From NCBI GenBank assembly GCA_002269645.1, contig NIVC01003853.1, forward strand, positions 1 to 64,000: a DNA stretch of 64,000 bases. The letters are read 5' to 3'. The stretch comes from Macrostomum lignano (Eukaryota). Positions 9,737 through 35,190 of the stretch are shown piece by piece. Within the stretch, counting starts at the first letter, position 1, and every line of letters starts with the position of its first letter. The notes beneath the pieces were generated by a model. It searched no databases and was not told the origin of the DNA. It saw nothing but the letters and a program-made list of their open reading frames with translations. The position numbers and the translations under genes are program-made.

Positions 9737-9869
9737 GGTGCCCAGTTCCGATTCATACCGTATTTTCTGCTTAATTGTACGTATGTTGTTACGCTCGTAC
9801 TGTATGGGTTTATTTGCATGCTAGTGGGGTCAAGCTTCCTGGAGGAATGGCTCAGCGGCTTCTGCGGCG

Positions 9870-10125
9870 GCCACGTGCGCTTCCTGCCAGCCACTTGCGC
9901 GTCCTGTCGGCAACCTGCGCGTCCCGCCCGGCCGCCAGCGCGTCCTGCCGGCCACCTGCGCGTCCCGCCCGGCCACCTGCGTGCCCTGCCGGCCATCTGC
10001 ACTTCCTGCCGGCCACCTGCGTGTCCTGCCGGCCACTTGCGCGTCCCGCCCGGCCACCTGCGTGCCCTGCCGGCCATCTGCACTTACTGCCGACCATCTG
10101 CGCGTCCTGCCGGCCACCTGCGATG
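9870..10125. repeat. GC-rich ~20-bp tandem repeats in the 3' noncoding region of element 1
   Basis: Recurrent cctgccggccacctgcgcgtc variants. Confidence 0.85.
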
Positions 10126-10371
10126 GTTTTCTGTGGCGCCAGCTTTGATGTAAAGCCTATTCCGTGCCCCGTGGTTGCTCTGACGAACTTGCGTGCAGAA
10201 AACCAGTACTTTTTTTTCATATTTCTTTTGCGGCAACCATTTTTCTTTTTCCCTTTTGCATTAGTTTGTCTCCAATTCTTTTGTTGTTTTTGATTATTTT
10301 TTTTGCTTTGTTATTTAAAAAAATTTGGTATCCCAGTCGCCGTGGTTCGAGCTCCGCCCTGTTTTTTTTGT

Positions 10372-10383
10372 AGGAGGGGAGGG
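10372..10383 (+). other. Polypurine tract of element 1
   Basis: aggaggggaggg immediately before TG. Confidence 0.75.
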
Positions 10384-11282
10384 TGTAGTGCATGCGCCCT
10401 TGTCAGTTGGCAGGGCGCGTTGCACTTTAGGGCTGGTTGGGGGGGTTGGCGGGCGTGGCAGGGTCTGGCCGCCGGCCGGGTTTTGCGCGTGCCCCTCCCC
10501 AGCCGTGCCCCTGCCCCGTGCTCAGGGCTGGTTGGCTGCGGCCGGGCCAGCTTTGGCGCGGGTGCAGCCCCTCCCCCTTAGGCGGGGTTTTGATTGGCTG
10601 GGCCGGCGTGGTTTGTTTTGGTGAGCTTAGCCGGTGGGGCCGTCTGCCCCAGGGTTTGGGTGCTATTTATGGTGCGACTCTGGCTCTTGCCCACCACCTG
10701 CGTGCTTTTTGTGTTTTGGTGTGCTCCGAAAGTGCAAGCGCGAGACCTGATAAAAGAAACAGCAACATTAGCTACTTTGATAAAAGAAACAGCAACATTA
10801 GCTACTTGGATAAAAGAAACACAATAGCCTAATTGAGAAGAGTCTTGGAGAATTAAGAAGAAGTCGGAAACTGCGCTTGAGACCTGCGAATAATAAACGG
10901 TGAACAGTCATCTGGCCACTGGTAAGCCGCCTGCTGTTTGAGTCCTTTCTTTCCGGGAAGCTTGCTAGGCCGAATTCTTGCCAGAGCGTCATAACGCCGG
11001 GAGACCATATAGCTTCTGTAGTACGGTACCGTTTACCATATATATTGCGTACGCCTTACGGTATAGAGAATAGAAGCACTCGAGAGTGTCACCACACCTC
11101 GAGCCGCAGCGTGAACTCTGAGTGTCACAACACCAGAGGGATCGAATTATTATCGCAGAGCGTCGCCACGCCTGCTCGTCGTATTCATAAAAGTACAGAC
11201 AGAGCGTCACAACGCCTGTTATATCACATATAATATATATTGTACTCGGGACTGGGCACCCAAGCCGACCCGGGTTACAACA
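10384..11282 (+). repeat. 3' LTR of element 1 (right end uncertain)
   Basis: Starts TGTAGTG after the PPT; contains ATTGGCTG, TATTTAT (10664), AATAAA (10892), GTAAGC (10922); candidate end cccgggttacaaca resembles the other LTR ends in the window. Confidence 0.6.
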
Positions 11283-11689
11283 GGGTTTTTTCTTCAGAGT
11301 GAATGATCAAAGCCCTGTGAAGTCATTTTGCTTTCTTACTATCGCATATCGACATACATGTACCTAACCATGCCATGAGTATCGGTAGGTTCGTGGGCAG
11401 CATCCCAGAGTAGAGAGCTGTAGTCTCCATGGCCCCTACGAGCTATAGTGCAGCACATTCTTGCATGCCGCAAATTACCACCAGCTTGCCTCGGTTTTCA
11501 GGCCGCGCGATCAGATCAGCAAGGATTAAACCAATGACGGCGGCGACCCAGGGAGGAGGATAAAGACTTTGAGAGAGAATTTTCATTCCTGTTAGAGGTG
11601 AGATTGCGAGTTTAAGTCAAAATGGGATGGACAGGTGCCTACACTTGACAATCCGCATTTAACTTCAGGCAAAATTCTTATCTACAGTT

Positions 11690-11895
11690 TCTACAAATTT
11701 GTGTCAGCTTGTGTAAGTTTGTGTCAGCTTGTCTACATTGGTGTCAGCTTGTGAACATTGGTGTCAGCTCGTGTAGATTGGTGTCAGCTCGTGAAAATTT
11801 GTGTCAGCTTGTGAACAGTTGTGTCAGTTTGTGTGAAGTTGTTTCAGCTTGTGTACAGTTGTGTCAGCTTGTGTGAAGTTGTGTCAGCTTGTGTG
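11690..11895. repeat. Minisatellite, 20 bp unit
   Basis: tgtgtcagcttgtg... variants. Confidence 0.85.
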
Positions 11896-12475
11896 ACGAA
11901 CTACTCAGCCCCCGCCGGTAGACCGTTCATTCAAAGCATCTTGAAGCATCTTGAAAGCAAAAATCGTGTTGAAGGTCTCGAGGGTAATCTGAGTCTATTC
12001 CGGTAGACATTCTGGTATCTCGCAGCGGCTCTGAAAGCCGATTCACTAAAAGGTCAAACTCTCCGACATTCGAGTATTTAATCGTTGAATTGTTTCATTT
12101 CCGACGGCTCTTGAGACACGATGGCCTTGATTGAAATTGCTGCAAGTTTCAGAGTCCAGACAAGCTTTCATTTAGGTTGATCCAAGGCAGACGCGCACCC
12201 CCTGTTCAGGGTGTTCAGGGATCAGCGCTCGACTGTCGCACAAACTTCACTTCTTCGATCTGGAAGATCCCATTAAGTTGGATTTCATAAAGTCAGTTTG
12301 AATAGCGGCTTTGCTACTGTGATTTTTAGGAAATTTAAAGTTCACCACCCCTCCTTTTAATATCCACACTCAACCCCTCTAATTTAATGTCTTTCAAATA
12401 TACTCGTTTGGACCCTGCCCTCAATTTAAAGAGTTTTTCAAGTCAATATACCATCTTTTTTCTCCATATTTCTGG

Positions 12476-13035
12476 AGGATGCTTGCTATCTGCGGGATGC
12501 TTGCTATCTGCGGGATGCTTGCTATCTGCGGGATGCTTGCTATCTGCGGGATGCTTGCTATCTGCGGGATGCTTGCTATCTGCGGGATGCTTGCTATCTG
12601 CGGGATGCTTGCTATCTGCGGGATGCTTGCTATCTGCGGGATGCTTGCTATCTGCGGGATGCTTGCTATCTGCGGGATGCTTGCTATCTGCGGGATGCTT
12701 GCTATCTGCGGGATGCTTGCTATCTGCGGGATGCTTGCTATCTGCGGGATGCTTGCTATCTGCGGGATGCTTGCTATCTGCGGGATGCTTGCTATCTGCG
12801 GGATGCTTGCTATCTGCGGGATGCTTGCTATCTGCGGGATGCTTGCTATCTGCGGGATGCTTGCTATCTGCGGGATGCTTGCTATCTGCGGGATGCTTGC
12901 TATCTGCGGGATGCTTGCTATCTGCGGGATGCTTGCTATCTGCGGGATGCTTGCTATCTGCGGGATGCTTGCTATCTGCGGGATGCTTGCTATCTGCGGG
13001 ATGCTGGCTATCTGCGGGATGCTTGCTATTTGCGG
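12476..13035. repeat. Near-perfect 18-bp minisatellite, about 31 copies
   Basis: Unit gatgcttgctatctgcgg. Confidence 0.95.
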
Positions 13036-13188: not shown

Positions 13189-16100
13189 TCAATTGCCAGT
13201 CTGGATAAGGAAATCCCAGAGAGCGTTGCCGTTCACTCCAGCATCAGGTTGGCAGGCGTTGCCGTTCACTCCAGCATCAGGTTGGCAGGCGTTGCCGTTC
13301 ACTCCAGCATCAGGTTGGCGGGCGCTGCCGTTCACTTCAGCATCAGGTTGGCGGGCGCTGCCGTTCACTTCAGCATCAGGTTGGCGGGCGCTGCCGTTCA
13401 CTTCAGCATCAGGTTGGCGGGCGCTGCCGTTCACTTCAGCATCAGGTTGGCGGGCGCTGCCGTTCACTTCAGCATCAGGTTGGCGGGCGCTGCCGTTCAC
13501 TTCAGCCGCCGGTTGGCAGGCGCTGCCGTTCACTTCAGCATCAGGTTGGCAGGCGCTGCCGTTCACTTCAGCCGCCGGTTGGCAGGCGCTGCCGTTCACT
13601 TCAGCATCAGGTTGGCGGGCGCTGCCGTTCACTTCAGCATCAGGTTGGCGGGCGCTGCCGTTCACTTCAGCATCAGGTTGGCAGGCGCTGCCGTTCACTT
13701 CAGCCGCCGGTTGGCAGGCGCTGCAGTTCACTTCAGCATCAGGTTGGCGGGCGCTGCCGTTCACTTCAGCATCAGGTTGGCAGGCGCTGCCGTTCACTTC
13801 AGCATCAGGTTGGCAGGCGCTGTCGTTCACTTCAGCCGCCGGTTGGCAGGCGCTGCCGTTCACTTCAGCATCAGGTTGGCGGGCGCTGCCGTTCACTTCA
13901 GCATCAGGTTGGCGGGCGCTGCCGTTCACTTCAGCATCAGGTTGGCAGGCGCTGCCGTTCACTTCAGCCGCCGGTTGGCAGGCGCTGCCGTTCACTTCAG
14001 CATCAGGTTGGCGGGCGCTGCCGTTCACTTCAGCATCAGGTTGGCAGGCGCTGCCGTTCACTTCAGCCGCCGGTTGGCAGGCGCTGCCGTTCACTTCAGC
14101 ATCAGGTTGGCGGGCGCTGCCGTTCACTTCAGCATCAGGTTGGCAGGCGCTGCCGTTCACTTCAGCATCAGGTTGGCGGGCGCTGCCGTTCACTTCAGCA
14201 TCAGGTTGGCGGGCGCTGCCGTTCACTTTAGCATCAGGTTGGCGGGCGCTGCCGTTCACTTCAGCATCAGGTTGGCGGGCGCTGCCGTTCACTCCAGCAT
14301 CAGGTTGGCGGGCGCTGCCGTTCACTTCAGCATCAGGTTGGCGGGCGCTGCCGTTCACTTCAGCATCAGGTTGGCGGGCGCTGCCGTTCACTTTAGCATC
14401 AGGTTGGCGGGCGCTGCCGTTCACTTCAGCATCAGGTTGGCGGGCTTCGCCGTCCTCAACAACGGATTTTAAAGGCAAATCGGCGTCGCCGTTGTTTGCG
14501 CCTGTCACAAAGTTTTTTCTCATGCGCCGTCTGCACGACCTTAGCCGGCGACGCAATGGCCTACGAAATGTCCAGATAATCGCCACTACAATGGCTACTA
14601 TCAGAGCTATGGCTACTGTGATTCCTGTGATGATTCCTGCGATTCCTGATGATTCCCGGTGGACATTGCTGTCCACCGGGCAGGGAACTTGCTCGTCGGA
14701 GTTGGTTCCTTGCATCTTTGGGTTGAACTCAACGGGAAGCAGCCGATGTACTGGTAGGCGTACAGCTTCATCGCTTCTGATCGGAATCAACTTCGGTTTT
14801 TTGTTGGAGTTCAGTCGAAGAGCAACTTGCGTTCGCTGCTCATCCCCAGAAACGTTTCTGTCGGACGGTAGAGGTGGCGATAACATATGGACAACCAGTT
14901 TTACGATCCTGCCTGATCTCCCAACTCCTTCTAACAATACTCACCCCAAGAAATCGATCAGCACAGACTGGTTGGCCAAATATATCCAGTTGCCTTTGTA
15001 CGTCAAGTTCCTGTTGCTGCAGTCGAGGTAAAACAGCTTCGCGCCAAAAAAAGCCAAAAATGGCAGCAGAATTTGATTGTCTTTGACTCGGTGCAGCACT
15101 CTGGATGCTGTGGGTGTTGGTTCGGTTAGTTTTGCGAAGTTGCTACCTAGCTTTCATGCAAGTGAACTCAGTTAATACGCTCGTAGTAGGGAATACGAAA
15201 TCCTGAGATCCCTGATATACAAGATGTGGTTAATCTGTAAACTACTTTTTAGCAGTGGCGTACCCAGGATTTTCCATACGGAGGGCACTGACAAGTTGCG
15301 ACACTAAATATTGACCTTTTTAGAGTGTGCTCTGTAAAAAAACAATCTTTACTTGAAACTCATTTATAATGGTTTGGTTTACGTTTCCACGCAACAAAAA
15401 TTATATTTGAGTACTGAGAGTTGAGACTTCAGATCGAGACTGACAGTTGAGTCATTAACTGTTGGCTCGTCAAGTCGAGCGTTGACTCAACGTCACAATG
15501 TTTAATAATCATGCAATGTAATTTTAATTTTTTTATTCTAAACAAGCTTCGCAAGGAAATTCAAATGTTCAAAATTAGAATTCAAAACTTTCACTCGTGA
15601 AGCCGTGCATTCGTGTGACTCTGATGATTATTCCTGGAAGTTTTAATTCCAGTAATAAGAATTTCTCGAGATCCCGGAAATTCATATGCTCGGGATTCAG
15701 AACTTTCATAAATATTGCAAGTTTATTAGAAGGCTCGCTTCTTCGTGTGTATTTAGCGATTTTTTTCTTCAAAAGAGCATTCTCGCCTTTGTGCCACACC
15801 AGCTTCAAAATAGGTGCATTTAAGGTTGCACATTTATACCTGGCTAAGATAGGAAACGATAGTCAGAAGTGAAATTACTCACAACTGCATTACTTTTGAC
15901 TGCAAGAAATATTGCACATATAGGCTCTCCCTGATCCCACACGCAGATATAGCTCGTAGGGTCGAAGCCTGTGAGTCATAAAACACAGGCAGAGTCAGAT
16001 AATTCTGTGAGTCAAAAAACACAGGCAGAGTCAGATAATTCTGTGAGTCAAAAAACACAGGCAGAGTCAGATAAGCCTGTGAGTCAAAAAAACACAGGCA

Positions 16101-18765
16101 GAGTCAGATAATTCTGTGAGTCAAAAAACACAGGCAGAGTCAGATAAGCCTGTGAGTCAAAAAAACACAGGCAGAGTCAGATAATTCTGTGAGTCAAAAA
16201 ACACAGGCAGAGTCAGATAAGCCTGTGAGTCAAAAAACACAGGCAGAGTCAGATAATTCTGTGAGTCAAAAAACACAGGCAGAGTCAGATAAGCCTGTGA
16301 GTCATAAAACACAGGCAGAGTCAGATAATTCTGTGAGTCAAAAAACACAGGCAGAGTCAGATGAGTCTGTGAGTCATAAAACACAGGCAGAGTCAGATAA
16401 GCCTGTGAGTCATAAAACACAGGCAGAGTCAGATAATTCTGTGAGTCATAAAACACAGGCAGAGTCAGATAAGCCTGTGAGTCATAAAACACAGGCAGAG
16501 TCAGATAAGTCTGTGAGTCAAAAAACACAGGCAGAGTCAGATAAGCCTGTGAGTCATAAAACACAGGCAGAGTCAGATAAGCCTGTGAGTCATAAAACAC
16601 AGGCAGAGTCAGATAAGCCTGTGAGTCATAAAACACAGGCAGAGTCAGATAAGCCTGTGAGTCAAAAAACACAGGCAGAGTCAGATAAGCCTGTGAGTCA
16701 TAAAACACAGGCAGAGTCAGATAAGCCTGTGAGTCATAAAACACAGGCAGAGTCAGATAATTCTGTGAGTCAAAAAACACAGGCAGAGTCAGATGAGTCT
16801 GTGAGTCATAAAACACAGGCAGAGTCAGATAAGCCTGTGAGTCATAAAACACAGGCAGAGTCAGATGAGTCTGTGAGTCATAAAACACAGGCAGAGTCAG
16901 ATAATTCTGTGAGTCAAAAAACACAGGCAGAGTCAGATAAGCCTGTGAGTCATAAAACACAGGCAGAGTCAGATAAGCCTGTGAGTCATAAAACACAGGC
17001 AGAGTCAGATAATTCTGTGAGTCATAAAACACAGGCAGAGTCAGATAATTCTGTGAGTCAAAAAACACAGGCAGAGTCAGATGAGTCTGTGAGTCATAAA
17101 ACACAGGCAGAGTCAGATAATTCTGTGAGTCATAAAACACAGGCAGAGTCAGATAAGCCTGTGAGTCAAAAAACACAGGCAGAGTCAGATGAGTCTGTGA
17201 GTCAAAAAACACAGGCAGAGTCAGATAAGCCTGTGAGTCAAAAAACACAGGCAGAGTCAGATGAGTCTGTGAGTCAAAAAACACAGGCAGAGTCAGATAA
17301 GCCTGTGAGTCATAAAACACAGGCAGAGTCAGATAATTCTGTGAGTCAAAAAACACAGGCAGAGTCAGATAAGCCTGTGAGTCAAAAAACACAGGCAGAG
17401 TCAGATGAGTCTGTGAGTCAAAAAACACAGGCAGAGTCAGATAAGCCTGTGAGTCAAAAAACACAGGCAGAGTCAGATGAGTCTGTGAGTCATAAAACAC
17501 AGGCAGAGTCAGATAATTCTGTGAGTCATAAAACACAGGCAGAGTCAGATAAGCCTGTGAGTCAAAAAACACAGGCAGAGTCAGATGAGTCTGTGAGTCA
17601 AAAAACACAGGCAGAGTCAGATAAGCCTGTGAGTCAAAAAACACAGGCAGAGTCAGATGAGTCTGTGAGTCAAAAAACACAGGCAGAGTCAGATAAGCCT
17701 GTGAGTCATAAAACACAGGCAGAGTCAGATAATTCTGTGAGTCAGCTTACAGAGAGCAAAAATTTCGAACAACCTGGTGAAAAATATTCACCTCATTGTA
17801 CGAGCGTAAGTGCAACTGAAAATTGTATTGCCCAGGATTGTATTCCCCAGTTGATGAGGCATTAATGCTTCGTAACCGAAATATTACTGCTCACCGTTCC
17901 GCAAAAAACTCGCCAATTCGGCGTGCATCGCAGTGCTGCAGCGGACAGCCACTCGACAGCTGCAGACCGTGGCCCAAGGCCGAATCAGCAGGAATCGGCA
18001 AGGAGCATCTCCCGCCGTGCCTGAAGCTTGTGCTGGAGTTGCACGACTCCTGGCTGGTTGCAGTGACTGTCAGATTGTCGGATGCAGTCACATTTGTGAC
18101 ATTTGCCAGCTTGGCTGTGATGTTCACTGTGTCCCCACTGCAATGTAGGGTGTCACTTATGCACTTCAAATCATTTTGACTGAACTCAACATTGCATAGC
18201 TGTTGCAAGAAGTGTGCGATCAGGTAGACGGTCAACACTTTTTGAATCGTGTCAATTTTGTCAAATCCACCACACACGTCAACACAACTGAAGTAAATGC
18301 AGTTTAAAACAAAGAAGTCCCTTACGCATTCGCCAAGATGTAGAGGACAGAGCTGAGGTTCACTGAGTAGTTGGCAAAGTCACCTCCTAAATTAAGAATG
18401 TAATAAGATTAGTTAGACAATAACACATCCAAGGTATCTAAAATGTATAGGAATAATTAAGCAAACGTGCTCACCACTGAAATGCGCAACATCCAGTCGG
18501 AGTCCTCGTCTTAGATCCGGAGGTTTGATCGCCAGAACGGTGTTGTTCTCAATCACCTTGACTTTCCAGATACAAGCCTCTGTTATCACGGCGGTCTTGT
18601 CAGCAAAACCGTCGTGGAGATAGAAAAATAGACGAATTCCTCCATGGACATCGAAAAATTTCCAATGGGTCTGTTCTCGACAGTACCCCACGTCATGCTC
18701 CACAGCCGTTACGATTCTGAAATTCAATGGAAGGATTTTTGGCTGATTGTACACGTGGCTGACTG
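13189..18765 (-). CDS. Multi-exon single-pass (type I-like) membrane glycoprotein of unknown family, copy A; 5' exons and part of the exon chain unresolved
   Basis: Phase-consistent exons: ~18765-18474 (..LDVAHFS), ~18387-18326 (GGDFANYSVNLSSVLYILANA), ~18287-17894 (Cys-rich, several NxS/T), ~15149-14945 (..LYLDCSNRNLT..DFLG), ~14908-13189 (TM IAGIITGITVAIALIVAIVVAIIW followed by RRPLRRRLR). GT-AG introns include 38 and 36 nt. Linkage from 17894 to 15149 not resolved. Confidence 0.7.
13225..14445 (-). repeat. Coding 33-bp tandem repeat (about 37 x ARQPDAEVNGS / ACQPAAEVNGS) in the cytoplasmic tail of copy A
   Basis: In frame with the TM-encoding exon, no stops until 13189. Confidence 0.85.
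15965..17745. repeat. Intronic 36-bp minisatellite, about 49 copies
   Basis: Unit gtgagtcataaaacacaggcagagtcagataagcct with several variants; absent at the paralogous position (~37850). Confidence 0.95.
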
Positions 18766-21255: not shown

Positions 21256-24200
21256 GAGCCCACTATTGTTGCTATTCTAAATTTGATGGAAATCCTAAAG
21301 CTATAACTCATGTGGTTGTAGAGTAGCTAAAAATCACTTATTTAGTCCGCACAGCCACTTTTTTAAATCAGAGAGCTGCAAATTAATCAACTCACTGCAG
21401 TCCGGCAACAATGAAAAGAAACTGGAGCAGCACTTTTGTCCGAATAAAATTCATTTTAATTTTATTCTGAAAGATCTGAACTTTCATGTTTAAGATTTGA
21501 GCTCGAACGCTTAATCTATATCGAACATGGAACCGAATTTTGTAATATATAACTTTAAAATTTTCATATAGCTTTTAGTTAAATTAGACAATGAGTTTTG
21601 TAATAAACTCTGAATAGTAGCATTCAAAAGGCTGTTTTATTGGTAGTAATAATTAATTGTTGCTTTAATTTGTTTGTTCGAAGTCGAGTAATTGAATTTA
21701 TTTTTGTTAGACTATTTTTTAACATCTGACTGCTGTCAGACTACTGACTACGTAAGTACGAGTAGTCTGAACTGCATTATTAGCGTGTAAATTTGTTCTC
21801 CGAGGAGCCTGCAATAAATCTAGAATTTCCAGACATAGCTTTTCAATGCTAGTAGAAGACATTAGGAGATCGGAAAGAAGCGATTCTAGTTCGTATATTC
21901 TGAAAAACAGCAGATGAGGAGACAATTACCATCAAGTTTAGCTGCCCCGCTCGGGCGTTTGAGCAGTTCCTTGACAAAGTCGCTGGTACACAAGTCGAAT
22001 CAAATCTGCGTCCATATCAGGTCTTTTCCTGACTTCACGTATCAACTGGTGAAAATAATAGTCGAGCGGGACACCTTCATGTTAACAGATGACGCACTTC
22101 CAGAAAAGCTCTGAAGTCGACATGGCAAGTCGCACACATCCTCTTACCGTCAGTAGTACCCAAAATAACTCTTTATTTACATTGTGCTATGATGTCGCAA
22201 AATATTCTCTGTAAGATTACTATACTGACTCCAGAGGGTCACTAGGTTTTGTGTTTGAAGTCTGATCGAATGAATTCAGGCAGCATAATGGCACTTTGCA
22301 TAGTCATGGTAGTCATAGATTGCGCGGGGAGCGGCCGCGGATTTGCCACGGAACTCCCAGCCCTATTCAAACAATACAGCGAATCCAACCATGAAGGGTG
22401 GGTCCAACCATTAGAAAATATGCCAGTAGAAACAGCCCGCACCGATAGGGCCGTTTTCTGACTATGCAGTTTGTCATAAATGTACGGATAGAGAGAAGAA
22501 CTTCAGAGAGAAAAAAATGCAGTCTGGCATTATCGCAGCAGTGGTGTACCCTGCTATCTACATTTGCATGCATGTACAGACCGCGACGAAATTTTTTGTA
22601 TTGCAAAGCAAACAGAGGGTAAAGCAAACAATAAGCCTTCATGGCAACAGGCAGGAGCCGGTGTGAGAGCTTAGTGCACAGCTGCTTGGTAGAGGGAATT
22701 GTTAGTCATGCAGAAAAGTATTGCTTACAATTGTACATTGCACAAATGTCAGACACTAGACTTTGCTTTTCTGTGGGGTGGACTGCTGCTTTGCAGAAAG
22801 AATTTCTATGCAAATTTAAGCTCTTCTTTCTCTAACATCATAAAGTGATTGCTGTGGCTGTCTGCTTTGTGCGCTATTGCCCTTCTTTCAAAGTGGTGTG
22901 CATAGCTTCATCTGTGTGGCCTGCACTAACTAGCTTGTACACAGAGCATCCCGTGATGCGTCAGCTAGTCAGTGGAAAGATGGAAAATGGTGGAAAGATT
23001 GCCTGCCAGGACAATATAGCAATACTAGAAATGACTAGTAAAATCTACACACACTTATACAACGATATGGTGCAATTATCTCGGTTTTCATTCAAGGATG
23101 GGTTTCTCACAATTCGAGCGTCAGGGGTGCGACTGACAGAGCGATTTCGGGCAACAAAAACAACAAGTTGCGCCTTAAAATGAGAACCGTGTCACATGGT
23201 GCGCCTGAAGGAGCGAATCCGGGGTGCCGACGTCGGCCAGCGGGCAGTCGACGAAACGCCAAGTGTGCGCCTCTCCTTGCCCGCTACCCACTGACGAGAA
23301 GTACGACTTGGTGCGGATGATGTGGCATATGAAGCTGGAGTCGCCGACGGCCACGATTTAAACATGTTAGACTGGCGTGGCGATAGAGTGCCGCTTTGGT
23401 GACTCGCTCATCGCTGATTTGTAAGCATCCGCCGCCTCAACCTGCTGTTCTAGCGAGTCCTACATGTCGGTTTCAAGTAGAATGAACTCGACCACCACCT
23501 AAAGCATCGCTGCCCTGTGGCGAAAATGTGTGGTAACTGCATTCCAATTGAATTTAATTTAGCATTTGTAAGAATTATCATCGAACTACCACCAAATAGA
23601 GAATGCTTTCAAACAGCAAAGCTCCAGGTTATTCACACAGATATGTGGCTTTGACTCTTTATTTACTGCCTTGCTTTCTTCAAGTCTTTATTATATAAAC
23701 TAAGCAACTCCTAAAAAATAATCGTTTTAGGCATAGAAAAGCATAAACATTGCTCTCACTTTTCTTGCCACTACTTGCAGTAGCCTAAATAGTCAGCCAA
23801 CAGCTCGATCAATCCGTTCAGCTTGTAAAATAATTCATGAAGACTGTGAGAAATTGAAAATTGAATCACAATCGCTGGACATCATGCTTAACAGCTCTTT
23901 CTCACGTGACGCACCGCAGCTGGGCCCACCGGATCACTTTTCGGGTGGAAGATCTTACATGGCATCGACCATCATTAGCAGAGAGAAGAATGGCTCGCGC
24001 CGCGAAATCCTACTCCTGGAGTCCCGGATCCCACTGCAGTTGATTCAAGTAAGTCCAAAGTTACTCACGCTAGCCAGGTTGATGAAGACAACACCAGCAG
24101 CAGCGAAGAGGATGACGAAGTGAATCCAGACGGCGCCAGCGTCCTGAAGGGCACCGACGACCAGGACCAGGTGATCGCCTGACAAGACAAGCCGGATGTC

Positions 24201-24599
24201 ATCATGGCCCTCGACACCATCTTGAAAGGGACCTGCTATATACGCTCGTACTTGGGTTTCTGGCACTCGTGCGAAAAAGGAATTTATTAGCCTTTAGGGC
24301 TCCGTCGCTTTCATTTAATGTAAAGCGCTTTGAGAATGGTTAAACTGAGGGACGAGAGTGATCAATCAGAACCGACACTTTGTACATGGACGTTGACTAT
24401 ATTGAACTGTTTGAACAACACTGCTGTACATCAATTTCAGCTTTCAAAGAGCTATACTCTGGCAATTTAACATTTAATAGTATACAAGCCTGAAGACGCA
24501 TGGCTGAGAAATCGAAACTAGTCGCAATTTCGAAATGCTGTTATCATTGATTTTCTTGTTTAATATTTATTCTGTACGAACGGCATTCAATGCTTGTTT

Positions 24600-24895: not shown

Positions 24896-25009
24896 TGAAC
24901 GCTTGTTCATAGTCAACAAGCTGGAATGCTGCTCATAACATGTTGCCATATAAAATGGTTAAACTCTAGTCAAGACGGCGTTTCAAAGCTAATGTAGAAA
25001 CTGGGGTGT

Positions 25010-25285: not shown

Positions 25286-25991
25286 CGCCTAGAAACTGAG
25301 GTAGTTCGGTAATTGGTTAGGAAATTAGCCTGCAAATGTCCGGCTGGCAAACGTCCCGCTGGCAAACGTCGGTTGGCTAACGTCGACTGGCAAACCTCCG
25401 GCAGGCAAACGTTGTAGACCCAGGATTGATTACTGACTGACAGACTTACCAACAGACCTACCGACAGATAATTTATTTTTATGATGCTAAATTGAAAGTA
25501 GCAACTAGCTCGTAAAGCTAAATAACAAAGTAGGCAATACAATAGCCGAAGAGAAGCAATGAGTGTTACTGAGTAGTGCTGTCGAAGTTGACAATGAATT
25601 ATAATACGCTCGTAGAGCGAAAACGAGTTTATTGCAATCGATCAGCGGGGAAGAAAACGAAAGAAAAGAAGTGAAGGGCCTAAGCGCGAGTTAAACTATA
25701 GATCATATATACAATATAAGATCTATGAAGATCTAGATCTATGATATAGGAATACAAGATCTATGGGTTGAATTTGTATTTATACTTGTATTAACATACC
25801 AAACTGGGTACAAGCGTAGCTGAAATATCTGTGGTAAATTAACGGTTGGGATTGTCTGTGCAGAAGAGCATGGTAGACGCAGGGAGTCGGCTAACTAAAA
25901 ATTGCAAAACAGAAAATACAGATATTTGGAGGATTGCGAATCCAATAAGTGCAGTAGGTTGAGTTTAGTCAGAGGCTTTATCGGGGCGAAA

Positions 25992-27516
25992 TTATCGCCG
26001 CTGGAGTAGATTGCACTTTAACGGGATTTTGATTGCTACGAGCCGTAAAACACAAAAAGCTAAAATGTTACTTTTACAGTCACATTTTCTATGTAGGAAA
26101 TCACGCAGCTCATCCGATTGTTGATAGGCCCGACGAGTACAAGACCTCAACAACTACATTAAATTATAGAAAAGTTAAAAAACCTAAGACGCTACTCAGT
26201 CACTCACTGTCTTGCTCAAAAGTAGCCAAGGTGCTCGCGGCGTGTCGCTTTGACGGAAGAGAAAAAATTCCTCGGATTCGCTGTTGAATTCATCATCATC
26301 CACCACGACGCATGTCAAACTTGAGGTCTCGTTCGAAGCCTCCTGGACATGTTTCTCCACTTCCTTCGCAATGAGCTGATAATCCACATTAGTGCGACAA
26401 GCGTTATTGCGCAGAGCCTTCACCGCAGAGGTGTAGGCATGGAGCCTTTTTCGATAGGGCATATTGCTCTGTTTTGCACTAACAAAGCCATATGACGCAT
26501 CACAGAATTGTAGGAAAACTTGAAATTCGTCGTCAGGCTTAGTCTAAAACAAAGCATTCATTGTAGAATAACTCTAAGCTACGATGAACTCCAACAAAGT
26601 AACTCGTGCTCACCTCACACTTTCGGTAGACCAGACAAAATTTTGCGAGGTGCAGCTCTTCGGCAGTTGTCTGTCTTTCATCTAGCAGTGACAGCCAAAT
26701 AGCCGTTGGATAAAATCCCAGATTTAAGAGATTCAACCCGCTGTTTGTGTAGTTGTCAATTAGAAAAATGGCGCCATCTTCTGGAAGCAGCCGTGCCAGA
26801 TCCTCAACAAATACTTCAGCTGAATCAAAAACTCCACCAACAAAGCTCAAGACGGCGATGTCGAATTCAGTTACTGAGTTTTGCACGAACTCCATCATAT
26901 CCTGCTGCACAAAAACTGACTTCACTGAAGCATTCGAAATTCTGCAGCAGTTGGTTAAGAAGGCCTTCTTCGGCCACCAGAATTTATCAACGCCAATGCA
27001 GCTAAACTCGCCTTGCTGGTTGGTTCGCTCTGCCCAGACATCCAGTACCGCCAGCAGCTCGCTACCCGGCCCGCAGCCCAATGAAAGCACACGGAAGCTG
27101 TTTGTTTTCTTGTTCCAGTGTTTATCAAGATGCTTTCTGAGCTGCCTTTCAAAAGATATTTTGAACTTTTTTACTTTCTTAGGCATGTGCTTCTTGGTGT
27201 AGCCACTCAGCAGGTCAGGACGCTCATAATAGAAGTAGGTGTCCTTTTTTGCGGCTGCCTCCCAAGACTCAAGCGCTTCTTTTTCCTCCTTAGAAAGTTT
27301 CTCTTCAAACAGATGTGACTGCCTGGGCTCGTACTTTAAAATCTCATCCAGGGCTCTTCGCACAACCTGCTGCGCGTCATCAAGATTGCCGTCAGTTGAC
27401 CTCAGCCTCCATGACAGCAGCTCAACCATGCACTCAAATGCTGTTGAGCTTTTTAAGTTCTCATCTTGATTTACTAGATAAGCCGTGAACCTGAAAACAT
27501 GAGCAGACTGATGCAT
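25992..27516 (-). CDS. Class I SAM-dependent methyltransferase-like protein, probably 4 exons
   Basis: Motif I RVLSLGCGPGSEL, motif II CIGVD, FDIAVLSF. Phase-consistent GT-AG chain: 27516-26614, 26468-26208, ~26153-26072, ~26035-25992 (last intron 36 nt). Confidence 0.7.
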
Positions 27517-28453: not shown

Positions 28454-29435
28454 CGAACACAATCTTCAAAAGGATAAGCTGCAAAATTATCGCATACCTG
28501 GAATGCTCTTTCGCGAATCGCTAGTCGGAGTTGCTTAGCAAACAGGTCATTCCACTACAAAGATTTGATAGGAATGCGAGAGGAATTATTTGTTACAACT
28601 GAAAGGCTGGGTTTATGATCTGTTCGTTCCGATGCGGTTTAGAAAAACACACAAATACGAGCTAAGACCGCATGAAGAGCTCAAAACCGGCTGGAATTCA
28701 TTGGATTTGGTTTTCTAAGAAACCGTATCAGAGCCGGATGATTAGAAATCCAGCCCTTGTCTAAACTTGGCCGCATTAAACTTTTACGTTCATACAGTAG
28801 CCTTACAATCTGAGCCTTTCCAATGTGTTGGTTGAGCGCCTTGTCGATGTCGCAGAAATACGCCAAGATGTGCTGGCTCCGACTCACTAGCATCTGCAAA
28901 GGTAAGCAAGAGTACCTGGGTATTTGGGCGGTATTGATAGCCATGTAGTAAATTGGAAGTATGCAGGTATTACCATTAGCTTCTCCAGAGTTTCTTGCAA
29001 GCCGTCCATCCAGAGCTGGTCTCGTTCGCTGTGATAATAACTCAGCTGACACAGAGCGATTTTGTGCAGACAGCAATAGGCACTGGCTGACATACTGCCG
29101 GCCACAAACAGATGGCCAAGAAAACTGTAAATATTTTTGGTGTTCCTTCATATACGAGCTAGAACAGCGATAATTTTCTTATAGGCATTACGATCACGGA
29201 TCAAGCATAAGATATTATACAGCACTAAGCCAAGTTAACTTATTAAAAATGAAGATTGACCAAAACAGAAATGGGTCATCAAAGATTTCAGGACTTTACA
29301 TGATACCTGCAACAATGTTGAATTGAATTCCCCCCTCAGTAGTCCTTGATTACAATACTACTAACCGATGGTAGGTGTTTAGGTGTTTACTGTTAATGCA
29401 GATTAGAGCGACCTGCAATTGCATGTTCGACTCAG

Positions 29436-29647: not shown

Positions 29648-30781
29648 ACTTACAGGATAGAATCGCGGTGCTGTTTGATGGCCTCGTTCAGCTGCTCCGG
29701 ATCTGACAACGGATTTGGTGAGCTGGGCATCTCATTTGCCTCGAATGCAGATCGAATGTCTTTAGCCAAGGCCTTCAACTCCATCCAATCAAGAATCGGC
29801 TGCAATCAAAGCAGACATGACGTAAACTAAACTTAATAACCTGCTTAATTACGAGCGTATCGTTTGTCATCAACCGAAGTATCTTACTCGTTCCAGAGCG
29901 CCAAATTTTGAGCACCAAATTTTGGAGACGGGCTGCAATGTGGGACGGTACAACTTATTTGTTAATTGTAGCCTAAGCTAGCGATAATAGCTATTGGTTA
30001 AATTTTTTATCTGTTAATTTTCTGATCAGTTCAAATTTCTAAAGCTACGCTCGTACTAGCTAGAGTCCCCAGGAGTCCGGACTACAGCATTGTACCTGAA
30101 AGGCTGTTGAAACATTGTCTGAGTTCAGCAGCTTGAAGATTAATTCAGACCACTGAAAGTTTAAGAGGATCAAAATGCATCTGTTATCCGCAAAGTAAAT
30201 TGAAAAGATTCGACATTCTTTAGAGTACCCTTTTAAGGTCTTCATCGCTGTTCAGAATCTTCAGCTTGTCGTCCCTTTCCTCGGCTGCTTCTCTGATGCT
30301 ATTGACTTCCTGAAATGTTTTATTTGGAAGCACTTTCCACTGCTGCAGTTCGTTAAACTCTTTGCAAGAGTTACGCGAAATAAAAATATTGTGATTAAAA
30401 AAGAATGAAAGCGGAAGTCGACTTGGACCCAATTGGAGGCCTAATGAAGGCAATACTTAATATCAACGAGTTTGCGCTTTCATTTCTGTTTATGCTTCTA
30501 AACTAAGCGAGCTACATTGTCAATTCTTATCGTGACTGATGTTTAAGGAAGCCCTACCTCGCGTATGTTTCTTTCTTTCATGCTTGAATTCAGACGCCTT
30601 CTCGCGGTTCGGTCCTAAAAAGTGTAAAAGTGAGTGCGTGACTGCTTTATTAGGTCGTTCGCTATTCAATGCAGTCTTGCACTGTTGCAATGGTACCAAA
30701 CTAGGAAGCCGCTACTCATTGTGATATTTCCAAAGTTGTTATCTTCCTGTTGCAATCGTGGGTTCTGCAGTCTAGGCTACT

Positions 30782-32969: not shown

Positions 32970-33617
32970 TGTTGTACCCCCCGGGATGGTCCAGGAGCTG
33001 CGAATCGGCTAGGTAGCAGGGCTGCCCAGCTGGGAGACACCATGTCCCGTCTATTCCTACTTCTAATAGACGGGAAGTAGCTGCAATCCACTCCAGTCCA
33101 CTCCAGTCCACTCCAGTCCACTCCAGTCCACTCCAGTCCACTCCAGTCCACTCCAGTCCACTCCAGTCCACTCCAGTCTACTCCAGTCCACTCCAGTCAA
33201 GCACTCGAGCGCACTGCTGCAAACCGTAACGTATATTTCGCTATTGATCAAATGCACTGCCGTCAGCGGGGGGGAAGAGGAGCCGGAACGGGCGGGGGGC
33301 AAGAGGGGCCGGAACGGGCGGGGGGCGCGCATAAATAAGCAAGGCAAAAAGGGGAGGGGTAAACCGACAGACAAAGCAAGCACACCCCACCCAAGTGACC
33401 TAACCAGCCAGCCAATCACAAGCCGCCGGGAAGGGTAGCGCACAGCTGGCTAGCGCACGAAAACCGGCCCCGGGCAGGCCGTAGGCAGACTAGGGTGAGG
33501 CCTAAGCCCCTAAACCCCAGCCCGACCGGCCGGCCCAACCCAGCGCGAGGGGGGAGGCAGAAAAGAGAGAGAGAGAAAAGGCCGGGGGAGCCCTCACTGA
33601 CGCAGCACGGCACAACA
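32970..33617 (-). mobile_element. Solo LTR related to the LTRs of elements 1 and 2
   Basis: Plus-strand termini TGTTGTA...CACAACA with GTTT on both sides (4-bp TSD); minus strand has ATTGGCTG and TATTTAT, and its end (cctggaccatcccggggggtacaaca) resembles the element-2 LTR end; internal (tccactccag)n at 33085-33200. Confidence 0.8.
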
Positions 33618-33898
33618 GTTTAAACAAAAATACACACAGTACCAGTGGTGCAAGAAGGAAAGCATGGAGTACATACGCTCGTACAGAATTTCTGGCCCCA
33701 TGTAGAAATTAACGCTCCGAATATTAAACAGACACATTAATCAGGGGTGGGTTCTGTGCACAGGCACATGGACTCAGAACTGGGGGGTTGGGGCTGAAAA
33801 TGTACGGTAGGAACAAATGTCGGCTTTTGAACTTCAGAGCTCAATATTTTCTCGAGCTTTTTGACAAACTTTTGGGTTTTCTCAGACTATTGCATGAC

Positions 33899-34595
33899 TA
33901 GGGGTCACAATCCCGGGATCCCGGGATTTAGCGCTTTTTCCGGGATCCCGGGATCCCTGGATTCACAGGGTCGGGATTCAATCCCGGAACGTTAATGCTA
34001 TGTTTTTATAATGTCTGATATAATAGCAAGTATTTTATCATAAAATGGCAGTTAGTTCAAATATGGTACATACACGCATACTCGTACATGTCCATTCTCC
34101 GTTGCCCACTTTGTAAGGTCTTTAATGTTGTTTGAGTTGAGTCTTATTTAAATCATTGAACGTTGAGATTTGATTTTAAAGTTTGAACTCATAGTCGTGA
34201 GTCCAGACTCCAGACTGACAAGTGACAACGTGAATGCCCAGGCGGTAGTAGGTTGTGACTTGTGTTGTGACTGTGAGTCCTTGTGACTCCTTGTGAGTGT
34301 GCCTCATGCCACGGGCCAACGACTCCAGGACCACGTCCACGAGTCATGTGCATTCGTTTTGCAATGTGCATACTGCTAGTGCTATTACATAGTATGTAAT
34401 ACATGTATATACATTATATTGCTTTGCATAGTGTTTGCTTATTTTTACTTGCAACTTGCAAATGTTCTCACGTTGGTCACGTGATAAAAAGTAATTCGTA
34501 GCGTTGTTATAACATTATAACAATGTTACGACAAGGATGGTACTGGAAAAATATCAATCCCGGGATTGACAGAATCCGGGATTTTGTGACCCCTA
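33899..34595. mobile_element. Non-autonomous hAT element
   Basis: 12-bp perfect TIR TAGGGGTCACAA / TTGTGACCCCTA, exact 8-bp TSD TGCATGAC, subterminal tcccggga repeats. Confidence 0.9.
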
Positions 34596-34639
34596 TGCAT
34601 GACCGAAAAAAACATCGGAACAACATCAGAGCAGCAATC

Positions 34640-34670
<31 letters not shown>

Positions 34671-34700
34671 ACAGCAGCAACAACAACAAATAACAACAAA
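34640..34700. repeat. (CAA)n microsatellite
   Basis: Read directly. Confidence 0.85.
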
Positions 34701-34839
34701 ATATGCTGTCAGGGTCTCTAGAAGTCAGCGTCAGAGGGCACGACCATGGGCTGCGAGAAATATTCACGGGTCTAAAAATTTTAAAAGAAATTAATTTTGA
34801 GCCGAGAAAAGGAGATTAAAGAGACGAGGAAGTTGCAGA

Positions 34840-35190
34840 AGAAACACTTCTCCACACCGGAGAGGCAGAATTTGCATTGGTCATCGCGTACGTCTCTCCT
34901 AGCGAAACCTAGCGAATCAGGCATGACCAGAGAGTGACATGGTGATCGCCCTGCAGGTATCCTCACTGTTAACTCTAAATTGAAACTGTGCAATGGTGAG
35001 AGAGTGAGAGGTGGAACCAGCGGATAAGAACCGCTGTAGTTGGTCTCATTGGCCCCGCCTGTCATTCCTGTGCTTACGAGCGTAGATGCCACCCACTGGT
35101 TGATCAGAGGTGACAGCGACCGCCAGGCAAGGCGGTTAGCGAGTTCGTTGCCAGGGTGCCTCGAGGATCCAATGCTGTGTGATTGGTTTC
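34840..35190 (-). pseudogene. Degenerate LINE RNase H / zinc-knuckle remnant
   Basis: Broken frames give HWI..HPGNELANRLA (RNase H WxxGH..GNExADxLA), then LSGHA and DDQCKFC..E. Confidence 0.5.

What the first reader, a model, noticed from the sequence alone, without database searches (positions are those of the whole stretch)
9790..35084. Over-represented motif TA-CGAG-(0-2 nt)-TA behaving like a transposon excision footprint
Seen: TACGCTCGTA or its reverse complement at 9790, 15176, 17799, 24241, 25605, 29850, 30046, 33674 and 35075, nine copies against roughly 0.1 expected under uniform composition. Relatives: TACGAGCTA (either strand) at 4951, 11437, 15950, 25506, 28656, 29153; TACGAGTA at 1870, 4651, 8469, 21757, 34079, 37267. 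At two sites the paralogous copy B has only TA (15176 vs ~36772; 17799 TACGAGCGTAagtgca vs ~37893 TAagtgca), and copies lie inside unrelated elements (Gypsy 3' region, dead LINE). Known: Tc1/mariner elements duplicate TA and leave TA-[terminal bases]-TA on excision. Inference: scars of a very active element ending CGAG...CTCG. A dispersed protein-binding site is the alternative.
Basis: partly seen in the sequence, partly recalled or inferred. Interest (0 to 1): 0.7.

Follow-up and report, generated by a model that had tools for sequence, protein, structure and literature searches.

The report
Transposon excision scars in flatworm DNA
The over-represented words TACGAGTA and TACGAGCGTA in this Macrostomum lignano (flatworm) window are most likely scars left at TA sites when a Minos-like cut-and-paste transposon inserted and later excised: a textbook mechanism seen here at unusually high density, with the transposon itself not found.

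Summary
TACGAGCGTA/TACGCTCGTA occurs 9 times (0.04 expected), TACGAGCTA 6 times, TACGAGTA 6 times and TACGAGCCGTA twice, all with unrelated flanks. The window is Macrostomum lignano.

In 276 kb of non-redundant M. lignano DNA, an unbiased scan of all TA-Nk-TA words picks two extreme outliers: TA-CGAG-TA (P~7e-18) and TA-CGAGCG-TA (P~8e-27).

Paralogues give empty sites:
- L006:19918 and L007:16652 read TA-GCTCG-TA where one and four paralogues have a bare TA.
- window:34079 is a +6 insert.
- window:15176 is a +7/8 insert.

Both major words are palindromes with a 2-nt central mismatch, as expected when two inverted transposon ends anneal. CGAG(CC) is the published terminus of Minos, whose excision leaves a 6-bp footprint.

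Scars of other Tc1 families also occur. TA-CATG-TA arose in one LTR after a Gypsy inserted, and TA-CTGG-TA matches the known M. lignano Mosquito element.

Caveats:
- No CGAG-ended element was found in 394 kb.
- There is no perfectly clean empty site for the 10-mer.
- The clustering in the first 37 kb is unexplained.

Verdict: a known mechanism, a new instance, notable for its density.

The parts
9790..9799 (-). 10-mer scar TA-CGAGCG-TA, inside the 3' internal region of Gypsy-1
   Evidence: The same site is present in all six Gypsy-1 copies held, so it was inherited with the element.
15176..15185 (-). 10-mer scar, in copy A of an intra-window duplication
   Evidence: Paralogue B (~36772) has TA-A there, so the insert is 7 or 8 nt, at the edge of the homology.
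17799..17808 (+). 10-mer scar
   Evidence: No alignable paralogue at this point.
24241..24250 (-). 10-mer scar
25605..25614 (-). 10-mer scar
29850..29859 (+). 10-mer scar
30046..30055 (-). 10-mer scar
33674..33683 (-). 10-mer scar
35075..35084 (+). 10-mer scar
   Evidence: It lies in an ORF with no Pfam hit, so the reading-frame test was uninformative.
4951..4959 (+). 9-mer scar TA-CGAGC-TA
11437..11445 (+). 9-mer scar, 155 bp beyond the Gypsy-1 3' LTR
15950..15958 (-). 9-mer scar at the edge of a 36-bp minisatellite
   Evidence: The paralogue alignment is messy.
25506..25514 (-). 9-mer scar
28656..28664 (+). 9-mer scar
29153..29161 (+). 9-mer scar
1870..1877 (-). 8-mer scar TA-CGAG-TA (canonical Minos-type +6)
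4651..4658 (-). 8-mer scar
8469..8476 (+). 8-mer word inside Gypsy-1, in a 35-bp tandem duplication; possibly native sequence and not a scar
21757..21764 (+). 8-mer scar
34079..34086 (-). 8-mer scar with an empty-site paralogue
   Evidence: The window has gcaTACTCGTAcatg and L007:3214-3004 has gcaTCcatg, a 6-nt insert.
37267..37274 (+). 8-mer scar, in copy B of the duplication; copy A has no scar at the equivalent place
26037..26047 (+).
62750..62760 (+). 11-mer scar; the only site in the right-hand 27 kb
25809..25818 (+). TACAAGCGTA, a one-mismatch (CpG to CpA) variant of the 10-mer
   Evidence: Pooled count is 4 against 0.24 expected.
50367..50376 (-). TACAAGCGTA variant
14749..14756 (+). 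TA-CTGG-TA, a +6 insert relative to paralogue B; the scar type expected from the CTGGG-ended Mosquito (DD37E) element of M. lignano
   Evidence: Termini from the supplement of PMC10379824.
27890..28453 (+). Internally deleted Tc1-like element with 25-nt TIRs (TATATACTCAGCAACAGTG...) and a DDE C-terminal remnant (WPSRSPDMNPIE). Its termini are not CGAG, so it is not the source.
5503..11282 (+). Context: 5'-truncated Gypsy-1 (pol 5540-8374, DnaJ ORF 8756-9736, 3' LTR 10383-11282)
38665..47169 (+). Context: young Gypsy-2 (LTRs 38665-39487 and 46331-47169, 98% identical). It carries no scar.

Best explanation
The words are fossil excision footprints of a Tc1/mariner-type cut-and-paste DNA transposon whose ends read CGAGC(C)...(G)GCTCG, the same terminal bases as Minos of Drosophila hydei.

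Proposed mechanism:
1. The element integrates at a TA and duplicates it.
2. On excision the transposase cuts the transferred strand at the element/TA junction and the other strand a few bases inside the element.
3. Each flank therefore keeps TA plus a 3' overhang of terminal bases.
4. End-joining anneals the two identical, inverted overhangs, giving a short palindrome with two mismatched central bases.
5. Repair or replication resolves the mismatch either way. A full 4-nt overlap gives TAC[GA/TC]GTA (+6 bp). A shorter overlap gives TACG[AG/CT]CGTA (+8 bp). TA-CGAGC-TA and TA-CGAGCCG-TA are trimming or fill-in variants.

Scars that arose in master copies of Gypsy elements were then copied by retrotransposition.

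Shown here: the words are real and heritable, they are enriched beyond this window in the ~0.4 Mb of M. lignano DNA sampled, they are inserted at TA relative to paralogues, they are strand-symmetric, and they favour AT-richer DNA.

Inferred: the identity and termini of the element, the overhang length, and the time of activity (about 2% divergence ago, with no detectable CGAG-type activity since).
For: 1. Enrichment in the window.
2. Replication outside the window. In 158 kb of non-redundant independent loci TACGAGTA occurs 21 times against 1.8 expected and TACGAGCGTA 7 times against 0.10. In the pooled unbiased TA-Nk-TA scan, TA-CGAG-TA occurs 23 times against 1.8 (P 7e-18) and TA-CGAGCG-TA 15 times against 0.12 (P 8e-27), and these are the two top outliers.
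3. Empty sites. L006:19918 reads cttTA[GCTCGTA]ctcgg where its 93%-identical paralogue reads cttTActcgg. L007:16652 reads gacTA[GCTCGTA]tgaac where four paralogous units have a bare TA. window:34079 is a +6 insert and window:15176 a +7/8 insert.
4. Assumption-free indel scan. Of 171 distinct 3-12 nt indels between paralogues, only four have the TA-X-TA versus TA form, with X = CTCG, GCTCG, CATG and CTGG.
5. No conservation outside the core and an even strand balance of 6:9, 13:15 and 5:3, as expected from random resolution of a heteroduplex.
6. Every variant equals TA + a prefix of CGAGCC + a suffix of GGCTCG + TA. The Minos TIR primer is TACGAGCCCCAACC... (PMC3680223). Minos leaves a characteristic 6-bp footprint (PMC3386967 and PMC10992017), and +4, +6 and +8 bp alleles occur in flies (PMC6980720).
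7. From my own knowledge, not checked here because the paper was not held: Arca et al. 1997 (Genetics) described four terminal bases flanked by the TA duplication, with a two-base mismatch heteroduplex.
8. The process occurs in this genome with other families. TA-CATG-TA is present in the 3' LTR but absent from the 5' LTR of one Gypsy copy whose LTRs are 99.1% identical. TA-CTGG-TA at window 14749 matches the CTGGG termini of the published M. lignano Mosquito element.
9. Paralogues A and B in the window do not share scar positions, so there is no positional conservation.
10. Scars sit in lower-GC DNA: 0.444 against 0.490 (P 1e-4).
Against: - No TA-flanked TIR element with CGAG/CTCG ends, no recurrent one-sided TA-CGAG end and no second Tc1 transposase signature was found in 394 kb.
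- The only Tc1 remnant in the window ends CTCAGC.
Site 15176 is a 7- or 8-nt insert at 80% identity.
- The simple 4+4 join TACGAGCTCGTA never occurs, so the joining rule that yields the 10-mer is inferred, not demonstrated.
- 22 of the 23 window sites lie in the first 37 kb (P 5e-4 to 4e-3), and this is not explained.
- Young Gypsy copies and LTR pairs carry no new CGAG scars.
- Among decayed forms, only one of the four possible CpG transitions is in excess: CAAG(CG). A subfamily with a mutated terminus could explain that instead of decay.
Confidence: 0.8

Rival explanations
1. A dispersed protein-binding site (a transcription-factor, insulator or similar motif) maintained by selection.
For: The 10-mer is nearly palindromic, as dimer binding sites often are. 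Exact copies far outnumber one-mismatch copies: 9 to 2 in the window and 15 to 7 pooled, with 6.1 one-mismatch copies expected by chance. The sites cluster regionally.
Against: - There is no positional conservation between the A and B paralogues.
- Paralogues have a bare TA at the same place.
- The spacer between the invariant TAs varies from 4 to 7 nt, which would break half-site geometry.
- There is no flanking information content.
- Sites lie inside retrotransposon interiors and LTRs.
- The intact-to-decayed ratio is equally explained by an age of about 2% divergence.
Confidence: 0.04
2. Remnants of a very short or degenerate repeat (a MITE or SINE core), or of elements removed by internal deletion or recombination between their ends and not by transposase excision.
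For: The TA...TA framing would also be left if an element were deleted down to its last bases. No element is present to show which route was taken.
Against: - No intermediate-length derivatives or recurring ends exist among the 61 one-sided TA-CGAG sites.
- The flanks carry no shared sequence.
- The products are highly stereotyped (two words dominate) and have the central-mismatch palindrome form typical of transposase-generated overhang joining. The broad size spectrum expected of random deletion is absent.
Confidence: 0.08
3. Chance, a compositional artefact, or a sequencing or assembly artefact (adapter or barcode remnants).
For: The assembly is built from long reads and is very repeat-rich. 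Short constant oligomers in unique contexts can be adapter remnants.
Against: - No shuffle reaches the observed counts.
- The same 10-mer sits at the same position in six Gypsy-1 copies on different contigs that differ by 2-3% around it, so it is inherited sequence.
- CpG-variant forms exist.
- The flanks are not reverse complements of each other.
Confidence: 0.01
4. Junctions of programmed or somatic DNA elimination. Tc1-derived elements would be retained in the germline and excised in somatic cells, so an assembly made from whole animals shows the excised state.
For: This would explain why scars are plentiful while no source element appears in 394 kb, and why the junctions are so stereotyped.
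Against: - There is no evidence for elimination in this species. I know of no report, and none turned up in the searches.
- Scars carry point variants and are absent from paralogues, as ordinary germline indels would be.
- Other Tc1 families show ordinary one-off scars in the same genome.
- The sampled sequence is only about 0.05% of the genome, so failing to see the element is weak evidence.
Confidence: 0.03

Closest known systems
Minos (Tc1-like, Drosophila hydei) excision footprints
   Same: The target is TA. The element terminus is TA|CGAGCC... (primer TACGAGCCCCAACC, PMC3680223). The characteristic footprint is 6 bp, that is four terminal bases plus TA, giving TACGAGTA/TACTCGTA (PMC3386967 and PMC10992017). 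Alleles of +4, +6 and +8 bp also occur (PMC6980720). The 8-mer here is exactly that word, and the 10-mer has the length of the +8 class.
   Different: No Minos-like element, TIR or transposase was found in the sampled flatworm DNA. The host is a platyhelminth, not a fly. Here the +8 word is as common as the +6 word, or commoner in the window. These are fixed genomic fossils at high density, not laboratory excision alleles.
Tc1 footprints in Caenorhabditis elegans (Plasterk 1991, EMBO J, listed; content from my own knowledge)
   Same: The TA duplication brackets a few terminal bases of a CA...TG-ended element, giving TA-CATG-TA. That word is the next non-AT-rich outlier in M. lignano (10 against 1.1 expected), and it arose in one LTR after a Gypsy insertion.
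   Different: It reflects a different terminal sequence and so a different family. It is less abundant here than the CGAG class.
Sleeping Beauty canonical footprint TAC(A/T)GTA
   Same: The logic is the same: a palindrome interrupted by central mismatched bases from annealed 3' overhangs of inverted ends, flanked by the TA duplication. The review gives the footprint and the NHEJ origin.
   Different: It has 3-nt overhangs and a one-base mismatch. It is a reconstructed vertebrate element and is not a genomic fossil class.
Paramecium internal eliminated sequences (Tc1/mariner-derived, TA-bounded; PMC3464196, listed)
   Same: TA-bounded Tc1-derived insertions are removed from DNA in very large numbers.
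   Different: IES excision is precise and leaves a single TA, is developmentally programmed and is carried out by a domesticated piggyBac transposase. Here extra bases remain, and nothing indicates programmed removal.
DD37E/Mosquito element of M. lignano (PMC10379824)
   Same: It is a documented Tc1/mariner family in the same genome with a TA target-site duplication. A TA-CTGG-TA scar matching its CTGGG ends lies at window 14749.
   Different: Its termini are CTGGG, not CGAG, so it is not the source of the main motif.

Membership tests
Tc1/mariner (ITm) excision footprint | The constant core is bracketed by TA on both sides (the duplicated target) | tested here: met
   CGAGCG has TA on both sides in 9 of 37 occurrences, against about 0.07 expected. 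CGAGCG and CGAGC are the top TA-N6-TA and TA-N5-TA words. The pooled scan gives P 7e-18 and 8e-27.
Tc1/mariner (ITm) excision footprint | The homologous empty site carries a single TA, and the insert equals core + TA | tested here: met
   L006:19918 (+7, 93% paralogue) and L007:16652 (+7, four paralogous units) are clean. window:34079 is +6, with TC in the paralogue. window:15176 is +7/8 and only approximate. There is no clean case for the 10-mer itself.
Tc1/mariner (ITm) excision footprint | The core bases are the terminal bases of an element present, or once present, in the genome | tested here: inconclusive
   No TA|CGAG...CTCG|TA element or recurrent end was found in 394 kb. That sample is about 0.05% of the genome. 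The bases do match the published Minos terminus.
Tc1/mariner (ITm) excision footprint | Palindrome with central mismatch, found in both orientations equally | tested here: met
   The words are TAC[GA/TC]GTA and TACG[AG/CT]CGTA. Strand counts are 13:15 and 6:9.
Tc1/mariner (ITm) excision footprint | Tc1/mariner transposons exist in the host genome | tested here: met
   A Tc1-like remnant with TIRs and a DDE C-terminus lies at 27890-28453, and PF13358 was found on its homologues. The Mosquito family is published for M. lignano. Both have other termini.
Minos family (Tc1-like with IR/DR-type ~255-bp TIRs) | Termini CGAGCC... | tested here: inconclusive
   This is inferred only from the scar spectrum. 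All variants equal a prefix of CGAGCC plus a suffix of GGCTCG, and the fifth base is C in 8 of 9 five-base cores.
Minos family (Tc1-like with IR/DR-type ~255-bp TIRs) | Long IR/DR inverted repeats and a Minos-clade transposase | not testable with these tools
   The M. lignano genome can be reached here only in ~23-kb pieces around known proteins, and no such element lay in the pieces fetched.
Sequence-specific protein-binding site | Positional conservation between paralogous or orthologous regions | tested here: not met
   The A and B duplicates do not share sites, and paralogues carry a bare TA.
Sequence-specific protein-binding site | Fixed half-site spacing | tested here: not met
   Cores of 4, 5, 6 and 7 nt lie between the invariant TAs.
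Dispersed repeat (MITE/SINE) core | Sequence similarity extends beyond the core | tested here: not met
   Information content is about 0 at all +-20 positions. BLAST of the flanks finds only Gypsy-internal copies.

The most novel reading that the evidence does not exclude
The scars are junctions of developmentally programmed or somatic excision of germline-retained Tc1-derived elements in a flatworm, an IES-like system in a metazoan. That would explain why tens of thousands of stereotyped junctions are seen in a whole-animal assembly while the element itself is not.
Probability: 0.03. Interest if true: 0.9.

Novelty: new member of a known kind. Interest (0 to 1): 0.45.

Why it matters
Excision footprints are textbook at single loci, but they are rarely visible as a feature of a whole genome. 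In the ~0.4 Mb of M. lignano DNA sampled here (window plus 15 loci), two footprint words are the most over-represented TA-bracketed words. About 1.2% of TA dinucleotides in a 37-kb stretch are scarred. A rough and biased extrapolation from the loci outside the window (about 27 excess scars in 212 kb) suggests on the order of 10^5 scars in the ~0.76-Gb genome.

If that holds up, several things follow:
- A Minos-like element swept through this genome and was largely purged. Cut-and-paste transposition would then be a measurable source of small indels.
- The scars give a dated record of a lost transposon. They are younger than the 11-20% divergent A/B duplication and older than the most recent Gypsy copies.
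- They flag a candidate natural transposon/transposase system for a regeneration model in which transgenesis tools are wanted.
- They also offer markers for separating the recently duplicated subgenomes.

Tried and rejected
1. Searched for a source element by scoring TIRs of all TACGAG...CTCGTA pairs, running a general inverted-repeat scan, clustering one-sided TA-CGAG ends and scanning six frames for Tc1/mariner signatures, in the window and 15 loci. The only find was a CTCAGC-ended Tc1 remnant.
2. Used that remnant's transposase fragment as the last homologue search. It returned only short fragments on tiny contigs.
3. Checked the published M. lignano Mosquito element. Its termini are CTGGG, so it is not the source.
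4. Looked for an empty site for the Gypsy-internal 10-mer at 9790. All six copies share it.
5. Looked for recent, copy-specific CGAG scars in LTR pairs and 97-100% identical Gypsy copies. None were found.
6. The site lies outside the alignable block, and 15950 is also messy.
7. Ran a reading-frame test at 35075 in a supposed LINE ORF. There is no Pfam support for the ORF, and it is open with the insert present, so the test was uninformative.
8. Searched the literature for the words themselves. Only primers turned up.
9. Tried to read the original Minos papers (PMC58754, PMC164655, PMC329244). They are not held.
10. Ran an Rfam scan of the window, with no hits.
11. Looked up the methyltransferase-like ORF 26539-27516 by exact match and by homologue search to place the organism. 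Nothing was found.
12. Looked for a homeologue of the window's unique DNA among the fetched loci. There is none.

No whole retroelement sequence was printed, assembled or turned into a consensus.

Full report
**1. Observation**

TACGCTCGTA or its reverse complement occurs 9 times (0.04 expected from dinucleotide-preserving shuffles). TACGAGCTA occurs 6 times (0.41 expected) and TACGAGTA 6 times (0.60 expected). No shuffle reached these counts.

The flanks of the sites are unrelated and carry essentially no information at any of the +-20 positions. This is therefore a bare 8-11 nt word and not the core of a longer repeat.

Of the 33 TACGAG sites in the window, 6 continue TA, 6 CTA, 9 CGTA and 2 CCGTA.

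Unbiased checks agree. Among all TA-N6-TA words in the window CGAGCG ranks first, among TA-N5-TA words CGAGC ranks first, and among TA-N4-TA words CGAG is second to AAAA. CGAGCG is flanked by TA on both sides in 9 of its 37 occurrences, against about 0.07 expected.

Only two one-mismatch relatives of the 10-mer exist in the window, both TACAAGCGTA.

**2. Organism and surroundings**

The window is eukaryotic, with GC of 0.42-0.55, and is packed with minisatellites. It contains the following:
- A 5'-truncated Ty3/Gypsy element, Gypsy-1, at 5503-11282. Its pol is at 5540-8374, a DnaJ-domain ORF at 8756-9736, and the 3' LTR at 10383-11282.
- A complete young element, Gypsy-2, at 38665-47169, with LTRs 98% identical and also a DnaJ ORF.
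- A Slo-like RCK exon.
- Two methyltransferase-like ORFs.

The Gypsy-1 pol is about 99-100% identical to Macrostomum lignano proteins. Fifteen loci (330 kb) were fetched from assembly GCA_002269645.1 through members of the Gypsy pol clusters.

The window also holds an internal duplication: A at 14.7-20.7 kb and B at 36.3-38.7 plus 47.2-49.4 kb, 80-89% identical, with Gypsy-2 inserted into B.

**3. The enrichment is a property of the sampled M. lignano DNA, not only of this window**

In 158 kb of non-redundant loci outside the window, TACGAGTA occurs 21 times (1.8 expected) and TACGAGCGTA 7 times (0.10 expected). Other prefix/suffix combinations, including the full 4+4 join TACGAGCTCGTA, are absent.

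In a pooled, tandem-masked, non-redundant set, an unbiased scan of every TA-Nk-TA word gives two extreme outliers: TA-CGAG-TA (23 against 1.8, P 7e-18) and TA-CGAGCG-TA (15 against 0.12, P 8e-27).

In 276 kb of non-redundant sequence the counts are 15 for the 10-mer and 28 for the 8-mer. Strand counts are balanced (6:9, 13:15). The sites lie in lower-GC DNA (0.444 against 0.490, P 1e-4).

The density is patchy. 22 of the 23 window sites lie in the first 37.3 kb, more than TA density explains (P 5e-4, or 4e-3 without Gypsy-2). About 1.2% of the TAs there are scarred.

**4. They are insertions at TA**

BLAST of every site's flanks against all the held sequence gave these paralogues lacking the insert:

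| Filled site | Filled sequence | Empty paralogue |
|---|---|---|
| L006:19918 | cttTA[GCTCGTA]ctcgg | cttTActcgg (93% identical) |
| L007:16652 | gacTA[GCTCGTA]tgaac | bare TA in four paralogous units |
| window:34079 | gcaTA[CTCGTA]catg | gcaTCcatg (L007) |
| window:15176 | 7- or 8-nt insert | TA-A (copy B) |

An assumption-free scan of all 3-12 nt indels between paralogues found 171 distinct events. Only four have the TA-X-TA versus TA form, and X is CTCG, GCTCG, CATG and CTGG.

The A and B duplicates do not share scar positions, so the scars are younger than that duplication and are not positionally conserved.

**5. Heritability and age**

The 10-mer at 9790 lies inside Gypsy-1. It is present at the same position in all six copies held, on different contigs, with 2-3% divergence around it. 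Another Gypsy family carries TACTCGTA in both LTRs and at one internal position in every copy.

So some scars arose in master copies and were spread by retrotransposition. This also excludes an assembly artefact.

The intact-to-decayed ratio suggests roughly 2% divergence since formation. The only one-mismatch variant in excess is TACAAGCGTA, at 4 against 0.24 expected.

Young sequence pairs (LTR pairs, and Gypsy copies 97-100% identical) show no copy-specific CGAG scars, so this family does not look active now.

**6. Match to known biology**

Both main words are palindromes interrupted by two central mismatched bases: TAC[GA/TC]GTA and TACG[AG/CT]CGTA. This is what annealing of two identical inverted 3' overhangs produces, with the heteroduplex then resolved either way.

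The core bases are those of the Minos terminus. The published Minos TIR primer is TACGAGCCCCAACCACTATTAATTC (PMC3680223).

Minos leaves a characteristic 6-bp footprint (PMC3386967 and PMC10992017). Sequenced fly excision alleles carry +4, +6 or +8 bp (PMC6980720). [quoted passage not shown]

From my own knowledge, not checked here because the paper was not held: Arca et al. 1997 (Genetics) described four terminal bases flanked by the TA duplication, with a two-base mismatch heteroduplex.

Every variant seen equals TA + a prefix of CGAGCC + a suffix of GGCTCG + TA. The fifth base of five-base cores is C in 8 of 9 cases.

**7. Other families leave scars in this genome as well**

TA-CATG-TA, the classic scar of CA...TG-ended Tc1 elements, is the next non-AT-rich outlier (10 against 1.1). 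At L013:14457 it is present in the 3' LTR of one Gypsy-1 copy. The 5' LTR (99.1% identical) and the window's LTR both have a bare TA there, with 24 of 24 flanking bases identical. That is a recent, post-insertion event.

TA-CTGG-TA at window 14749 is a +6 insert relative to paralogue B. It matches the CTGGG termini of the Mosquito (DD37E) element published for M. lignano.

At L001:14846 two scars abut and share a TA: TA-CATG-TA-CGAGCG-TA.

**8. What is missing**

No TA-flanked TIR element with CGAG/CTCG ends, no recurring one-sided end and no further Tc1 transposase signature was found in 394 kb.

The single Tc1-like remnant in the window (27890-28453) has 25-nt TIRs and a WPSRSPDMNPIE remnant. 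It ends CTCAGC and is not the source.

The 10-mer has no perfectly clean empty site. The 'dead LINE' context could not be confirmed, and a frame test at 35075 was uninformative. The joining rule that favours +8 and never gives the 4+4 product is inferred. The 37-kb hot region is unexplained.

**9. Verdict**

The best explanation is fossil excision footprints of a Tc1/mariner element with Minos-like CGAGC(C) termini (confidence about 0.8 for the scar mechanism, lower for the Minos-like identity).

Rivals:
- A binding site: contradicted by bare-TA paralogues, variable spacing and the lack of positional conservation.
- A degenerate repeat or deletion remnants: there are no intermediates and no shared flanks.
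- An artefact: the word is inherited across diverged copies.
- Programmed somatic elimination: not excluded, but there is no positive evidence.

The mechanism is known. The instance and its density appear to be undescribed in the literature that could be searched. I rate it a new member of a known kind, of moderate interest.

Noticed in passing
window 8756-9736 (+) and 44750-45601 (+): Both Ty3/Gypsy elements carry an extra ORF with a DnaJ (J-domain) downstream of pol/integrase. This is an unusual accessory gene for an LTR retrotransposon, and two families only ~67% identical in pol both have it.
   Followed up: partly
L013:14457-14464 versus L013 ~4780 (the two LTRs of one Gypsy-1 copy): TA-CATG-TA is present in the 3' LTR but a bare TA in the 5' LTR (99.1% identical) and in the window's LTR. 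This is a recent Tc1-type insertion/excision scar of a CA...TG-ended family, dated after the Gypsy insertion.
   Followed up: yes
window 14749-14756: TA-CTGG-TA is a +6 insert relative to paralogue B (36.3 kb). It matches the CTGGG termini of the published M. lignano DD37E/Mosquito transposon. The word is not significantly enriched overall (5 copies in the 286 kb held at that point: window plus L001-L010).
   Followed up: partly
window 27890-28453: An internally deleted Tc1-like element of about 560 bp, with 25-nt TIRs (TATATACTCAGCAACAGTG...) and a frameshifted DDE C-terminal remnant. Its closest database relatives are only short fragments, 77% identical or less.
   Followed up: partly
L001:14846-14861 (also L001:14771): Two scars abut and share a TA: TA-CATG-TA-CGAGCG-TA. 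At 14771, TACATGTA is followed by GCTCGAA, a possible decayed CGAGC scar. This suggests that scar-created TAs are re-used as targets.
   Followed up: no
pooled loci; window 25809 and 50367: Among one-mismatch variants, only CG to CA at the first CpG is in excess: TACAAGCGTA 4 against 0.24, and TACAAGTA 13 against 4.65. The other three possible CpG transitions are not. This could be biased decay, or a sub-family of elements with a CAAG terminus.
   Followed up: partly
window 1-37300 versus 37301-64000: 22 of the 23 scars lie in the left 37 kb, even after allowing for TA density (P 5e-4 to 4e-3). The right part holds a young Gypsy, GC-rich genic DNA and minisatellites. Local hopping, sequence age or chromatin state could be responsible.
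   Followed up: partly
window 14678-20681 versus 36278-38664 plus 47170-49381: An intra-window segmental duplication (80-89% identical), with Gypsy-2 inserted into copy B at 38664/47170. Copy A additionally holds a 1.8-kb 36-bp minisatellite (15965-17744).
   Followed up: partly
window 26539-27516 (-) and 61028-61801 (+): Two ORFs with weak Methyltransf_23 matches. The first (325 aa, ATG start) has no homologue at E<=1e-3 among 5.8 billion proteins and is not on record as a called gene.
   Followed up: partly
whole window (e.g. 527-1432, 12477-13038, 13223-14445, 15965-17744, 19265-21255, 47921-49357): Extreme minisatellite load: 51 TRF rows, with many arrays of 18-45-bp units at 92-99% identity. 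Some families are shared between loci, for example the 21-bp array at 30966-31244, which also occurs in L007, L009 and L011.
   Followed up: no
L003, L005-L012 (Gypsy-3), LTR position ~+30 and internal ~13462: This Gypsy family carries TACTCGTA in both LTRs and once internally in every copy. L009's 3' LTR and L008's 5' LTR have small deletions within the word. These sites are inherited with the element, so they inflate raw genome-wide counts.
   Followed up: yes
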